53,425 bases of DNA from Octopus bimaculoides (lineage: Eukaryota), in assembly GCF_001194135.2 (NCBI RefSeq), contig NC_069002.1:3665984-3719408 (forward strand), in the 5' to 3' direction. The position numbers were made by a program, and so were the translations under genes. Shown here piece after piece: positions 35,901-38,900 of the stretch; the first letter of the stretch is position 1; every line of letters starts with the position of its first letter. Below the pieces are notes generated by a model, which was not told the origin of the DNA, made no database searches, and saw nothing but the letters and a program-made list of their open reading frames with translations.

Positions 35901-38900
35901 CTCTGTCTCTGAAAAAAGGAAATACACGTTGGACAGTAGTCCTTGATATACAAAAAGACAGGATGGTCAAACCTGGAATGTCTATGATCATAAGTGCTCA
36001 ATCAAGGCGTCCAGAGGCTAAAAAACTATTAAATACAAATTAGTCTAAACAAAGCAGCAAGCTGGTAGAATCGTTAGCAAGTCCGACAAAATGCCTTGTG
36101 GTATTGCTTCTGGCTTTTCACATTTTAAGTTCAAATCCCACTGAGGTCAACTTTGCCTTTCATCCCTTCAGGGTCGATAGAATAAAGTACCAGTCAATGT
36201 AACCAACTTGTCCCCTCCTCTTCCCCTCAAAATCACTGGCCTTGAATCCTGCAACAGACCGGTGCCACATTCAGAGGACTGTTGTGATCTCAACCATGAG
36301 GCTGGTTACCATAGAAACCATGTAACCAGGACTCAAGCGAAAAGAAAAACTATCAGCTGATACAAATTTATTTCATTCTTTTGTCTGTCTGTGTGTCCCA
36401 TTAAAACTCAATTAATTAGCTGGTTAAACGATTGATTGATTGATTATTGGTTAAGTGTATAATCAATTGCTATTGGTTAGTTTACAGGTCGATGTAACCT
36501 TGTCTGTTGTAGGTCGTCCAAAGAAGAGTTGATCTGATGACTGCTGAAGGTATAGAATTTAAAACCAATATCAATGTTGGCAAAGATGTCTCAGCTGTAG
36601 AACTACACCGGAAACATGATGCTATGGTCCTCACACTTGGTTCCACTTGGCCAAGAGACTTAAAAATTCCAGGTAGACAACAACCCATCCTTGCTGTTTG
36701 TTGATGTGTGTGCTTCTTATGCTTAGTTTTGAGCATTTTTATACATCAGGCAGACACATGAGTTGTGCATCTTGTGAATTGTTCATCTTGTGAATTGTGA
36801 GTTGTACATCTTGTGAGTTGTCATATAGTTTTACATGTTATCATACTTTCTTGTGTTATGCAAGTCATGTGTTTTTATACAATCACTTATGTTGTTACAC
36901 TGTTCCATGTGTTACGATGTACATTGTCCTACGTGTTATCATGCAGTCTTTTATGTTGTCATACAAACCTGTCTGTCTTCCTGTAGTTCAACATGTTATA
37001 GTTCCATATATTACCGTGTGTGTTATCCTACACCAGTTATCATAGAGTCCATGTGCTGCCATCTAGTCCAACATGTTGCTTTATATCTTATATATATCAA
37101 CATGTGTTAATGTTTTCTCATGTAGTCTTCTAAATTCTTGCAGGACGTGAACTTGATGGAATCTATTTTGCTATGACATTCCTGTCAACCTGGCAAAAGA
37201 TTCAAGAATCCAACAGTTCTGACCAAAGTTCCATTTCTGCCAAAGACAAGAATGTTCTGGTGATTGGTGGTGGAGACACTGGCGTGGACTGTATTGGGAC
37301 ATCCCTGCGACAGGTATTTCTGACTCCTTCATCTTATATTTATTTCTCCCCACCTCTTGAGAGACTGCTACTTTATTCGCCACAGTGAACCTTTCTGATA
37401 TTTTGACGTAGGCGCAGGCTAAGCTGTATGGCTGTGAAGCAAATTTATGAGGCACATAACCAAGTGTGTACCTTTCTCTCACTTCCTCCTGAGTTTGTTC
37501 TGATCGAATCCTCCATGTGTTAACATGTGCCTTCTAACAACAGTGTAAACTTCATTTCATCAAGATATCCTCAGCCTAAAGAGTTCCCTGTGGTACACAA
37601 CTCTCTTGGATATTTACTACTTCCGATGTTCCGCTCACTATGAAATATTTATAGGCCGGATCATATATAAATAAATAAATGAAATAAATAAATTAATATA
37701 TATATAAATATATATATATATACAAATTAATAAATAAATAAATATATATATAAATAAATATATATATATATATAAATANNNNNNNNNNNNNNNNNNNNNN
37801 NNNNNNNNNNNNNNNNNNNNNNNNNNNNNNNNNNNNNNNNNNNNNNNNNNNNNNNNNNNNNNNNNNNNNNNNNNNNNNCGAGCAAAGACTCAGAAACATG
37901 TCCCTGAATGCTGGCTAGGCTGAGTGGAAGAACTTGTCTTCCCCTCGCAAACTTAAGGACACAGTAATTGTGTCAATGCCGACAGGAAGCGGTCCAGTTT
38001 CCTAGGGCTAAATGGCAGTATTGTGTTCTCTTATTGGGATTGTCACATTAAGTTGACAATATACTACAACTTTATCGCTCCACTACTGCTTAAATCTCTC
38101 CGAGAGATTTAGAAATATTGTATTTCTAATTTTGCTGATCAGTGAATAAATTTCACTATGATTTATATATGTTTGCGAAGGCGAAACGGGCTTCTCTATC
38201 CGGCTAGCAAGCTACTTCACGCTGATGACGAACAAAGACTCAAAAACATGTCCCTGAATGCTGGCTAGGCTGGGTGGAGAAGCTTGTCTCCCCCTTGCAA
38301 ACTTAAGGACACAGTAATTGTGTCAAGGCCGACAGGAAGCGGTCCAGCTTCCTAGGGCTAAACGGCAGTAGTGTGTTCCCTTATTGGGATTGTCACATTA
38401 AGTTGACAATATACTACAACTTTATCGCTCCGCTACTGCTTAAATCTCTCTGAGAGATTTAGAAATATTATATTTCTAAATTGCTGATCAGTGAATAAAC
38501 TTCACTATGATTTATATAAGTTTGCGAAGGCGAAACGGGCCTCTCTATCCAGCTGGTAAGCTACTTCACGCTGGTGACGAGCAAAGACTCAGAAACATGT
38601 CCCTGAATGCTGGTTAGGCTGGGTGGAGGAGCTTGTCTCCCCCTCGCAAACTTAAGGACACAGTAATTGTGTCAAGGCCGACAGGAAGCGGTCCAGCTTC
38701 CTAGGGCTAAACGGCAGTAGTGTGTTCCCTTATTGGGATTGTCACATTAAGTTGACAATATACTACAACTTTATTGCTCCACTACTGCTTAAATCTCTCT
38801 GAGAGATTTAGAAATATTATATTTCTAATATATATATATATATTTATTTATTTATTTATTTATAATTGTATTTATATATATGTATAAATATAAGTATAAA

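What the first reader, a model, noticed from the sequence alone, without database searches (positions are those of the whole stretch)
37879..38828. Hammerhead-ribozyme tandem array (non-LTR retrozyme-like) inside glutamate synthase intron 39
Seen: a 349-350 bp unit repeated head-to-tail at least 2.7 times. The consensus junction reads helix I 5' strand, CTGATGA, C, GAG-CAAAGA-CTC (helix II), A, GAAA, C-AT-G, TC, then the helix I 3' strand. Helix I is about 18 bp and interrupted: CCAG CTGGT A AGC T A C TTCA C G pairs with C C TGAA T GCT G GTTAG G CTGG. Helix III is minimal and ACATGT is a perfect palindrome. Predicted cleavage falls after 37902, 38252 and 38601. Established: minimal type I hammerheads with palindromic helix III, cleaving as dimers, in tandem monomers of a few hundred nt define metazoan non-LTR retrozymes (newt satellite 2, Schistosoma Sm-alpha, bivalve and coral examples described by Cervera and de la Pena); these yield small circular RNAs. 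Inference: this is a cephalopod member. I do not know whether it has been described. Deviations from a canonical core: C opposite A at the base of helix II and a C-C mismatch in helix I.
Basis: partly seen in the sequence, partly recalled or inferred. Interest (0 to 1): 0.92.

Follow-up and report, generated by a model that had tools for sequence, protein, structure and literature searches.

The report
Decayed hammerhead-ribozyme tandem repeat in intron
A 349-bp sequence repeated head-to-tail inside an intron of an animal glutamate synthase gene carries the remains of a hammerhead self-cleaving ribozyme of the kind found in "retrozyme" mobile elements, but both complete ribozyme copies visible here are mutated at essential positions, so this is most likely a fossil of a known type of element, not a working one.

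Summary
A 349-bp unit is repeated 2.7 times at 37879-38828 (TRF score 1717). Its left end is cut by an assembly gap. A covariance model built only from four experimentally validated coral, mussel and axolotl retrozyme hammerheads finds exactly these two junctions in the whole window (17.2 bits, E about 0.008; 11.6 bits). Helix III (GAAACAUGUC) is identical to axolotl HHR_Amex1, which cleaves as a dimer. Loop 2 is CAAAGA against CAAAAA. Helices I and II pair through different bases than in the validated ribozymes. The monomer cut at the predicted sites is very stably folded (z = -7). The unit has 44% GC, has no ORF and is flanked by AT-rich microsatellite.

There are limits. Rfam hammerhead models do not match. 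Helix II is the weakest of the compared set. The copy differences look like ordinary GC-to-AT decay. No further copies could be retrieved, and the cephalopod origin could not be verified.

Verdict: a decayed locus of a non-LTR retrozyme-type element, a new member of a known kind, of modest interest.

The parts
37879..38828 (+). Tandem array of a 349-bp unit, 2.7 visible copies. The left end is cut by an assembly gap. The right end stops 227 nt into a unit, where it passes into AT-rich microsatellite.
   Evidence: TRF period 349, score 1717. Alignment of the copies. Self-BLAST finds no other copy in the window.
37879..37908 (+). Junction 0: only the 3' half of a hammerhead is visible (C GAG CAAAGA CTC A GAAA CATG TC | CCTGAA). 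All of its core positions are canonical. The predicted cleavage site is after 37902. The CUGANGA box lies in the gap.
   Evidence: Sequence reading.
37903..38252 (+). Monomer A (350 nt) between predicted cleavage sites. It is the most diverged copy. Linear MFE is -99.7 kcal/mol.
38216..38258 (+). Junction 1: hammerhead-derived motif TTCACG CTGATGA C GAA CAAAGA CTC A AAAA CATG TC | CCTGAA. The CUGAUGA box is intact. G12->A at 38243 changes the general base. G->A at 38232 leaves helix II with no predicted stable hairpin. The predicted cleavage site is after 38252.
   Evidence: Model R1 hit at 38208-38266, 11.6 bits, E 0.36, which is at the noise level on its own. Helix II energy 0.0.
38253..38601 (+). 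Monomer B (349 nt) between predicted cleavage sites. As RNA it folds into a long closing stem plus internal hairpins. About 65% of its bases are paired.
   Evidence: MFE -127.8 kcal/mol, z = -7.07, 0 of 100 shuffles as stable. Circular MFE -122.6. The minus strand gives -116.4, z = -5.6.
38565..38607 (+). Junction 2: hammerhead-derived motif TTCACG CTGGTGA C GAG CAAAGA CTC A GAAA CATG TC | CCTGAA. GAAA, helix II, helix III and the cleavage site are canonical. There is an A6->G substitution at 38574. The predicted cleavage site is after 38601.
   Evidence: Model R1 hit at 38557-38615, 17.2 bits, E 0.0075, full length 1-63. It is the only hit of the one-mismatch descriptor.
38602..38828 (+). Monomer C, truncated after 227 nt.
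37663..37778 (.). AT-rich microsatellite, (ATAA)n/(TA)n, on the left of the array, followed by a 100-N gap at 37779-37878.
   Evidence: TRF. Gap list.
38829..38906 (.). AT-rich microsatellite, (TA)n/(ATTT)n, on the right of the array, followed by a 285-N gap at 38907-39191.
   Evidence: TRF..
37152..37313 (+). Upstream host exon of glutamate synthase (...[24 protein letters not shown]). The GT donor is at 37314. The exon start given here is approximate.
   Evidence: Translation. Sequence. Other exons of the same gene on the + strand match GATase_2, Glu_syn_central, Glu_synthase and GXGXG.
39192..39293 (+). Visible part of the downstream host exon ([34 protein letters not shown]). The GTAAGT donor is at 39294. 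The 5' part of this exon lies in the gap.

Best explanation
This is a genomic array of a non-autonomous, non-LTR retrozyme-type repeat. Each 349-bp unit was born with one type I hammerhead ribozyme spanning the unit junction.

Inferred life cycle of the family, taken from the established retrozyme model and not shown here:
1. A multimeric + strand transcript forms.
2. It self-cleaves after GUC at each junction. Helix III is only A-U plus a CAUG loop, so it cannot form a hairpin. Two ribozymes must pair through the ACAUGU palindrome as a double hammerhead.
3. The 349-nt monomer, with 5'-OH and 2',3'-cyclic phosphate ends, is closed by a host RtcB-type ligase into a highly base-paired circle.
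4. The circle is copied by a retroelement reverse transcriptase, probably from a Penelope-like element.
5. The copy is inserted as a tandem, here into an AT-rich microsatellite.

This particular locus sits in sense orientation in an intron of glutamate synthase and has since decayed. Every complete catalytic core visible has a substitution at an invariant position: A6->G in one, and G12->A plus a broken helix II in the other. CUGANGA and GAAA of one core are contiguous through the helix II hairpin, so a double hammerhead cannot combine the good box of one unit with the good box of the next. The visible locus is therefore most likely a non-cleaving fossil that is simply spliced out with the intron.
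For: Shown:
- The tandem array and its coordinates.
- A covariance model trained only on four experimentally validated retrozyme hammerheads (sequences from Suppl. Table 2 of PMC7229834; model) finds in 53 kb on both strands only the two junctions, full length and in register.
- The descriptor chance expectation is 0.005-0.015 per window, and the array covers under 2% of the window.
- GAAACATGTC is identical to axolotl Ax330/HHR_Amex1. Both have a 6-nt loop 2 (CAAAGA against CAAAAA). Both have the same 3-nt/1-nt internal loop six pairs from the core (UAC/U against UGC/U), followed by RGC/GCU.
- Helices I and II pair in 91.7% of cells against 16-42% when slid, with changes on both sides in 8 of 12 pairs.
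- A mismatch at 10.1/11.1 has a precedent. The active axolotl HHR_Amex2 has U.U there.
- The monomer fold has z = -7.07 on the ribozyme strand, which is more stable than the opposite strand.
- GC is 43.8%, there is no ORF above 51 aa and no tRNA.
- Helix III forms no hairpin, and its self-duplex is -6.0 kcal/mol, the same as Ax330.
- Decay: 13 of 18 polarised substitutions are GC->AT, including G12->A. Eight of 16 substitutions at paired sites break pairs.
- G12 is the general base (PMC6155905).
- Retrozyme features, the link to Penelope-like elements and the microsatellite insertion bias come from PMC7229834, PMC8557442 and bioRxiv 10.64898/2026.07.22.740005.
Against: - Rfam's hammerhead models give no match, even on 101-nt windows at E<=10.
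- The custom-model scores are modest. The second junction's 11.6 bits equals the noise seen in unrelated DNA, 10.6 bits.
- The register of the comparison alignment was set by hand.
- The hammerhead-compatible fold of the junction is 5.5 kcal/mol less stable than the MFE fold.
- Helix II of even the repaired consensus is the weakest of the set, at -1.7 kcal/mol.
- Position 6 is an unpolarised A/G tie. Given the GC->AT bias, G could have been the state when the array formed.
- No other copy of the family, no RNA data and no Penelope-like element were available, so the family consensus, copy number, expression and mobilising enzyme are all inferred.
- The hidden part of the array could contain intact ribozymes.
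Confidence: 0.75

Rival explanations
1. The locus is an active retrozyme source. The array is transcribed with the host intron or on its own, self-cleaves as dimers, and yields a circular RNA of about 349 nt.
For: Junction 0 has a fully canonical 3' half, and the array continues into a gap that may hide intact units. Sense orientation in a transcribed intron would supply multimeric RNA. The monomer fold is very stable. Natural ribozymes tolerate imperfections in their helices, for example HHR_Amex2 with U.U at the base of helix II.
Against: Both complete cores carry a substitution at an invariant core position, A6->G or G12->A, and G12 is the general base. A double hammerhead cannot rescue this, because each core takes both boxes from one unit (reasoning from hammerhead topology). 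Helices II and III are very weak. The substitution pattern is neutral decay. Rfam gives no hit.
Confidence: 0.1
2. The repeat is not a free-standing retrozyme. It is a tandem remnant of the pseudo-LTR of a Penelope-like element whose coding part was lost, or lies in the gaps.
For: Penelope-like elements carry hammerheads in their pseudo-LTRs, insert as partial tandems, prefer microsatellite targets and cause assembly gaps (PMC4209133, PMC8557442). Animal retrozymes are reported to be derived from such pseudo-LTRs. The array is flanked by AT-rich microsatellite and gaps.
Against: At least 2.7 consecutive 349-bp units have no ORF between them. The ribozyme has the canonical retrozyme architecture: a 6-position helix I with a defined loop 1, a 4-position helix II with a 6-nt loop, and a helix III with a palindromic loop. 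It does not have the min-HHR architecture described for metazoan PLEs, which has a 6-8 bp helix II, a short helix I and no helix III. Neither the ORF list of the window nor the 10-ORF Pfam scan showed a reverse transcriptase or a GIY-YIG endonuclease ORF.
Confidence: 0.1
3. It is an ordinary satellite or segmental tandem duplication in which a hammerhead-like string occurs by chance.
For: No copy has an intact core. Rfam does not recognise it. The thermodynamic MFE of the junction is not the hammerhead fold.
Against: The chance expectation is 0.005-0.015 per 51 kb on both strands for the descriptor and E about 0.008 for the independent model. On top of that, the motif falls inside the one 349-bp tandem, strongly folded, low-GC element of the window. 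There is also a 10-nt identity with the helix III region of a validated retrozyme ribozyme, matching loop 1 and loop 2 architecture, and helices kept by compensatory changes.
Confidence: 0.04

Closest known systems
Axolotl/newt non-LTR retrozymes with HHR_Amex1 (Rtz331; newt satellite 2 type), PMC7229834
   Same: Tandem units of about 330-350 bp. A type I hammerhead spans the junction. The helix III region GAAACAUGUC is identical: one A-U pair capped by the palindromic CAUG, so activity depends on dimers. Loop 2 is 6 nt (CAAAAA against CAAAGA). The same 3/1 internal loop lies six pairs up helix I and is followed by RGC/GCU. The self-duplex energy of helix III is the same, -6.0 kcal/mol.
   Different: The host is a different phylum (a probable mollusc against an amphibian). 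There is no sequence similarity outside the ribozyme. Helix II here has C.A instead of G-C at 10.1/11.1 and is weaker. The helix I sequence is different and has a C.C mismatch at 1.2/2.2. The copies here have mutated cores. GC is 44% against 58%.
Mussel (Mytilus galloprovincialis) retrozyme Mg353, PMC7229834
   Same: A mollusc host. Tandem repeats of 350-390 bp, low GC, non-coding, with a type I hammerhead and a GAAAC-palindrome-GUC helix III. They are expressed as highly self-paired circular RNAs.
   Different: The mussel ribozyme has a longer helix III palindrome (ACGCGCGU, self-duplex -14.7 kcal/mol), a regular 4-bp helix II and an intact core, and it cleaves as a monomer in vitro. There is no similarity outside the core.
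Axolotl HHR_Amex2 (Rtz353)
   Same: A non-Watson-Crick pair at the base of helix II (10.1/11.1), which is tolerated with reduced activity. It is more active as a dimer.
   Different: The mismatch is U.U there and C.A here. Helix III is longer there (two pairs plus a tetraloop).
Minimal hammerheads of Penelope-like element pseudo-LTRs, PMC4209133
   Same: Type I topology, palindromic 15.2-16.2, proposed action as dimers, association with tandem insertions and with microsatellite targets.
   Different: Metazoan PLE min-HHRs have a long helix II (6-8 bp), a short helix I without a defined loop 1, usually no helix III, and an adjacent RT/GIY-YIG ORF. None of these is seen here.
Rfam Hammerhead_1 hits in a cephalopod genome (235 loci in Architeuthis dux, PMC6962438)
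   Same: They show that type I hammerheads exist in cephalopod genomes, if the window is indeed from a cephalopod.
   Different: Those loci reach Rfam's threshold and this one does not. That paper does not describe their repeat context.

Membership tests
Hammerhead ribozyme, type I | Intact conserved core (C3 U4 G5 A6 N7 G8 A9 ... G12 A13 A14 ... A15.1-U16.1 H17) in one molecule | tested here: not met
   Junction 1 has A at position 12 (38243). Junction 2 has G at position 6 (38574). Junction 0 lacks its 5' half because of the gap. The zero-mismatch descriptor finds nothing in the window.
Hammerhead ribozyme, type I | Core boxes in the right order and spacing, with helices I, II and III in type I topology | tested here: met
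   The one-mismatch descriptor hits 38565-38607 only. In register with four validated ribozymes, 91.7% of helix cells pair, against 16-42% in slid controls. The register was set by hand from the core boxes.
Hammerhead ribozyme, type I | Match to the curated Rfam hammerhead covariance models | tested here: not met
   No hammerhead family matches at gathering score, at E<=10 on the array, or at E<=10 on 101-nt junction windows.
Hammerhead ribozyme, type I | Significant score against a model of experimentally validated retrozyme hammerheads | tested here: met
   Model R1 was built from coral, mussel and two axolotl ribozymes. It gives 17.2 bits, E 0.0075 at 38557-38615 and 11.6 bits, E 0.36 at 38208-38266, with no other hit in the window. 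The support is weak: the noise floor is about 10.6 bits.
Hammerhead ribozyme, type I | Site-specific self-cleavage giving 5'-OH and 2',3'-cyclic phosphate ends | not testable with these tools
   This needs in vitro transcription of monomer and dimer constructs.
Metazoan non-LTR retrozyme | Head-to-tail tandem repeats of about 170-400 bp | tested here: met
   Period 349, at least 2.7 copies.
Metazoan non-LTR retrozyme | A type I hammerhead in every repeat (the definition of an 'active' retrozyme in bioRxiv 10.64898/2026.07.22.740005) | tested here: not met
   A hammerhead-derived motif is present at every junction, but each complete one has a core substitution.
Metazoan non-LTR retrozyme | Low GC (below 45-50%), non-coding, no LTR/PBS/PPT | tested here: met
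   GC is 43.8%. The longest stop-free stretch is 51 aa. There is no tRNA-like element. PBS and PPT were not searched for specifically.
Metazoan non-LTR retrozyme | A highly self-paired monomer, with the ribozyme at the end of the closing stem | tested here: met
   MFE -127.8 kcal/mol, z = -7.07. The 5' and 3' ends form the closing stem that continues helix I.
Metazoan non-LTR retrozyme | Many dispersed genomic copies, expressed as linear and circular RNA | not testable with these tools
   There is one locus in the window. The searchable collections hold no copy. No transcriptome was available.
Penelope-like element (pseudo-LTR with min-HHR) | An RT plus GIY-YIG ORF flanked by the repeats | tested here: not met
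   There is no ORF between units, and no such ORF was seen in the window's ORF list. Only 10 ORFs were scanned against Pfam.
Penelope-like element (pseudo-LTR with min-HHR) | Min-HHR architecture: long helix II, short helix I, no helix III | tested here: not met
   Helix II has 4 positions with a 6-nt loop. Helix I has 6 positions plus a defined internal loop. Helix III is A-U with a CAUG loop, which differs from the description in PMC4209133.

The most novel reading that the evidence does not exclude
The family to which this array belongs is a live invertebrate (possibly cephalopod) retrozyme whose ribozyme combines an amphibian-type, strictly dimer-dependent helix III with a C.A pair at the base of helix II. 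Sense-oriented intronic arrays such as this one, including units hidden in the assembly gap, would then be processed out of host pre-mRNA into circular RNAs of about 349 nt. That would couple circle production to transcription of glutamate synthase, or lower the gene's output.
Probability: 0.08. Interest if true: 0.6.

Novelty: new member of a known kind. Interest (0 to 1): 0.3.

Why it matters
If the family consensus proves intact and active, it would add another mollusc lineage, possibly cephalopods, to the hosts of non-LTR retrozymes. It would also show that the very weak, dimer-only helix III known from salamanders occurs in invertebrates too. The main retrozyme study describes invertebrate ribozymes as efficient monomers.

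The locus also illustrates a practical point. Decayed retrozyme copies fall below the Rfam hammerhead thresholds, so genome annotation misses them. A small model built from validated retrozyme ribozymes still finds them.

As it stands, this locus is a fossil copy in an intron with no evident effect on the host gene.

Tried and rejected
1. Rfam at gathering score on the whole window, at E<=10 on the array and at E<=10 on each junction gave no hammerhead or other ribozyme family. The only hits were weak CRISPR-repeat, snoRNA and miRNA matches that reflect hairpins.
2. I tried to retrieve more copies of the family. The longest stop-free translation of the unit, used as a protein probe, gave no candidate. 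An invariant 18-mer outside the ribozyme gave 8 metagenome hits, all confined to the 18-mer and therefore chance. The ribozyme 22-mer found nothing in viral contigs. The contigs that carry the closest host-exon relatives contain no similar repeat and give only a 10.6-bit noise hit.
3. I tried to establish the taxon. A linker exon gave no homologue. A conserved exon gave 77-78% unnamed fragments at best, and a scallop as the nearest named relative. The cephalopod origin therefore remains unverified.
4. Thermodynamic folding of the junction alone, and of two junctions together, does not give the hammerhead as the MFE. The dimer MFE does pair the two ACAUGU palindromes.
5. RNA editing (A-to-I) as the source of copy differences is rejected. 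Only 2 of 18 polarised changes are A->G, and 13 are GC->AT.
6. Rescue of the two half-dead cores by a double hammerhead is rejected on topology, because both boxes of a core come from the same unit.
7. The unit shows no homology to the coral, mussel or axolotl retrozymes outside the ribozyme.
8. The unit has no tRNA-like part.
9. The first MAFFT alignment of the validated ribozymes mis-registered Ax330. I replaced it with a pre-registered alignment using N fillers.
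Full report
OBSERVATION. Tandem Repeats Finder reports one long-period array in the window: 37879-38831, period 349, 2.7 copies, 94% matches, score 1717. The three copies are 93-97% identical. The unit occurs nowhere else in the window. The array begins directly at a 100-N gap (37779-37878), in the middle of the ribozyme motif, so its true length is unknown. 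On the right it stops 227 nt into a unit and passes into AT-rich microsatellite and then a 285-N gap. AT-rich microsatellite also lies left of the left gap.

WHAT THE JUNCTIONS READ.
- Junction 1 (38216-38258): TTCACG CTGATGA C GAA CAAAGA CTC A AAAA CATG TC | CCTGAA.
- Junction 2 (38565-38607): TTCACG CTGGTGA C GAG CAAAGA CTC A GAAA CATG TC | CCTGAA.
- Junction 0 (37879-37908): only C GAG CAAAGA CTC A GAAA CATG TC | CCTGAA is visible.

No complete junction has an intact core. Junction 1 has G12->A (38243) and a second helix II mismatch (38232). Junction 2 has A6->G (38574). G12 is the general base of the reaction (PMC6155905). That A6 is an invariant core position whose substitution abolishes activity is established hammerhead biochemistry, taken from my own knowledge.

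IS IT A HAMMERHEAD AT ALL? Rfam says no. No hammerhead family appears at gathering score, at E<=10 on the 952-bp array, or at E<=10 on 101-nt windows around each junction.

I therefore made an independent test. Supplementary Table 2 of Cervera and de la Pena 2020 (PMC7229834) gives four retrozyme constructs that were shown to self-cleave: coral Amil224, mussel Mg353, and axolotl Ax353 and Ax330. I aligned their ribozymes by structural element and built a covariance model from them alone (R1). I then searched the whole window on both strands. It returns exactly two hits, the two complete junctions. Both are full length (model positions 1-63) and in the expected register: 17.2 bits, E 0.0075, and 11.6 bits, E 0.36. 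The noise floor of this model is about 10.6 bits, seen as a hit without core boxes in unrelated DNA. So only junction 2 stands out on its own. Junction 1 is simply its decayed copy.

A hand-written descriptor gave a second estimate. It requires helix I with at least 5 of 6 pairs, CUGANGA, a 4-position helix II with at most one mismatch, a 4-8 nt loop, GAAA, a palindromic inner helix III, and UH. With no core mismatch it finds nothing in the window. With one core mismatch it finds only 38565-38607. Simulated windows give 0.005 and 0.015 hits respectively. The hit also falls inside the only 349-bp tandem element, which covers under 2% of the window, so chance is a poor explanation.

COMPARISON WITH VALIDATED RIBOZYMES. 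Axolotl Ax330 (HHR_Amex1) reads GGC UGC ACCUCA CUGAGGA GGUC CAAAAA GGCC GAAACAUGUC UGGGGU U GCU. The window reads AGC UAC UUCACG CUGAUGA CGAG CAAAGA CUCA GAAACAUGUC CCUGAA U GCU.
- The helix III region is identical.
- Loop 2 has the same length and shares 5 of 6 bases.
- The internal loop in helix I has the same 3/1 shape at the same distance from the core, and is followed by the same RGC/GCU stem.
- The helix I and helix II sequences are different but still pair.

Counted over the six sequences, 91.7% of helix cells pair, against 16-42% when the partner is slid by 1-3 columns. Eight of 12 pairs show changes on both sides. The register was fixed by hand from the invariant boxes, which favours the model somewhat.

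The 'C opposite A' at the base of helix II sits at positions 10.1/11.1. Axolotl HHR_Amex2 has U.U at the same position and still cleaves, more slowly as a monomer and better as a dimer. Helix III cannot form a hairpin (0.0 kcal/mol) but forms a 6-bp self-duplex of -6.0 kcal/mol, exactly as in Ax330. HHR_Amex1 is reported to need a dimeric arrangement. By the criteria of PMC4209133, the architecture is the canonical metazoan type and not the minimal variant of Penelope-like elements.

THE UNIT AS A WHOLE. Cut at the predicted sites, the 349-nt + strand RNA folds with an MFE of -127.8 kcal/mol (z = -7.07; 0 of 100 shuffles as stable). Its two ends form a long closing stem that continues helix I, with several internal hairpins. 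As a circle the MFE is -122.6. The opposite strand is less stable (-116.4, z = -5.6), which fits G-U pairs on the ribozyme strand. GC is 43.8%. The longest stop-free stretch is 51 aa. There is no tRNA-like part. There is no similarity to the coral, mussel or axolotl retrozymes outside the ribozyme, as expected for lineage-specific families. All of this matches the published description of non-LTR retrozymes: tandem units of 170-400 bp, low GC, non-coding, highly self-paired.

STATE OF THIS LOCUS. Of 18 substitutions that can be polarised by majority, 13 are GC->AT transitions and only 2 are A->G. This is ordinary DNA decay and not an editing signature. Between the two full monomers, 16 of 21 differences lie in predicted pairs. 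Eight keep the pair, all by one-sided G-U changes, and eight break it. Monomer A is 28 kcal/mol less stable than monomer B. The core boxes differ at 2 of 13 compared positions, which is no better than the unit average. Nothing therefore indicates selection on structure or on the ribozyme since the array formed.

In a hammerhead, CUGANGA and GAAA of one core are joined through the helix II hairpin. A double hammerhead exchanges only the helix III and helix I strands, so it cannot assemble one good core from the two half-damaged units. Even the repaired consensus has the weakest helix II of the compared set (-1.7 against -3.2 to -7.2 kcal/mol). Its hammerhead-compatible fold is 5.5 kcal/mol above the MFE of the junction. 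The visible part of the locus is therefore most likely catalytically dead.

CONTEXT. The window carries exons of a eukaryotic NADH-type glutamate synthase on the + strand, with GATase_2, Glu_syn_central, Glu_synthase and GXGXG domains. The exon ending ...[16 protein letters not shown]|gt stops at 37313. The next visible coding sequence, [15 protein letters not shown]..., starts right after the gap at 39192 and ends at a GTAAGT donor at 39294. The array is therefore intronic and on the same strand as the gene. The intron number cannot be counted.

A recent preprint reports that retrozymes are under-represented in introns of Xenopus, although about 43% of copies are intronic. It also reports that they derive from pseudo-LTRs of Penelope-like elements. 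Those elements favour microsatellite targets and tend to break assemblies. That fits the AT-rich microsatellite and gaps on both sides here, but this is circumstantial.

TAXON. The species is not in the searchable protein or contig collections. The nearest named relative of a conserved exon is the scallop Mizuhopecten yessoensis (80% over a partial match). The best full-exon matches are unnamed eukaryotic fragments at 77-78%. A mollusc is plausible, but a cephalopod is not verified. In the held literature I found no description of retrozymes in cephalopods. The giant squid genome paper lists 235 Rfam Hammerhead_1 loci without further analysis.

VERDICT. It belongs, by architecture, with the non-LTR retrozymes, closest in ribozyme design to the dimer-dependent amphibian type. 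This locus is a decayed copy, not a demonstrably functional ribozyme array. The family-level claims (activity, circles, copy number, host lineage) remain untested because no further copies or RNA data could be reached. It is a new member of a known kind, of modest interest.

Noticed in passing
window 4382-4554, 14693-14879, 19345-19507, 21729-21913, 30280-30435, 32785-32962, 35746-35899, 45331-45564: A SINE-like interspersed repeat of about 150-190 bp occurs at least eight times in both orientations in the introns, at 72-80% identity. It is unrelated to the hammerhead unit.
   Followed up: partly
window 21678-21901 and 45341-45564: Two inverted copies of the repeat above are 98% identical over 224 bp, far closer than any other pair, and the second abuts a 669-N gap. 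This could be a recent insertion, gene conversion or an assembly artefact.
   Followed up: no
window 5628-6010 and 53096-53425: Two stretches are each their own reverse complement (383 bp at 85% and 330 bp at 90%). They are long foldback or inverted-repeat elements, possibly MITE-like.
   Followed up: no
window 2030-2208, 12329-12509, 32548-32760, 6045-6214: A second interspersed repeat family (75-89% identity) gives spurious ORFs with a shared peptide (...[27 protein letters not shown]...).
   Followed up: no
window 1605-2081 (-): A 158-aa ORF has a C-terminal part (...[49 protein letters not shown]...) that resembles, from memory, the C-terminal region of non-LTR retrotransposon ORF2 proteins. 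It has no Pfam match.
   Followed up: partly
window 38907-39191 (gap): About 25-30 codons expected between ...GTSLRQ (exon ending at 37313) and PWPLWP... (39192) are missing, so part of a coding exon of the host gene lies in the assembly gap. Any gene model here will be incomplete.
   Followed up: partly
window 28029-28185 and 28795-29051: There are two minisatellites, 23 bp x 6.9 and 21 bp x 12. The first lies immediately upstream of the GXGXG-domain exon.
   Followed up: no
window 37663-37778 versus 38829-38906: The AT-rich microsatellites flanking the array differ in orientation. The left is mainly (AAAT)n/(TA)n. The right begins with (TA)n(ATTT)n, the reverse complement, before returning to AAAT-type. 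This may reflect the insertion mechanism or misassembly next to the gaps.
   Followed up: no
L009 and L010 (ENA ERZ21867824 contigs): A 'metagenome' assembly contains two different eukaryotic contigs with glutamate synthase exons 77% identical to the window's. The exon has the same extent, which indicates DNA of a related animal in that sample.
   Followed up: no
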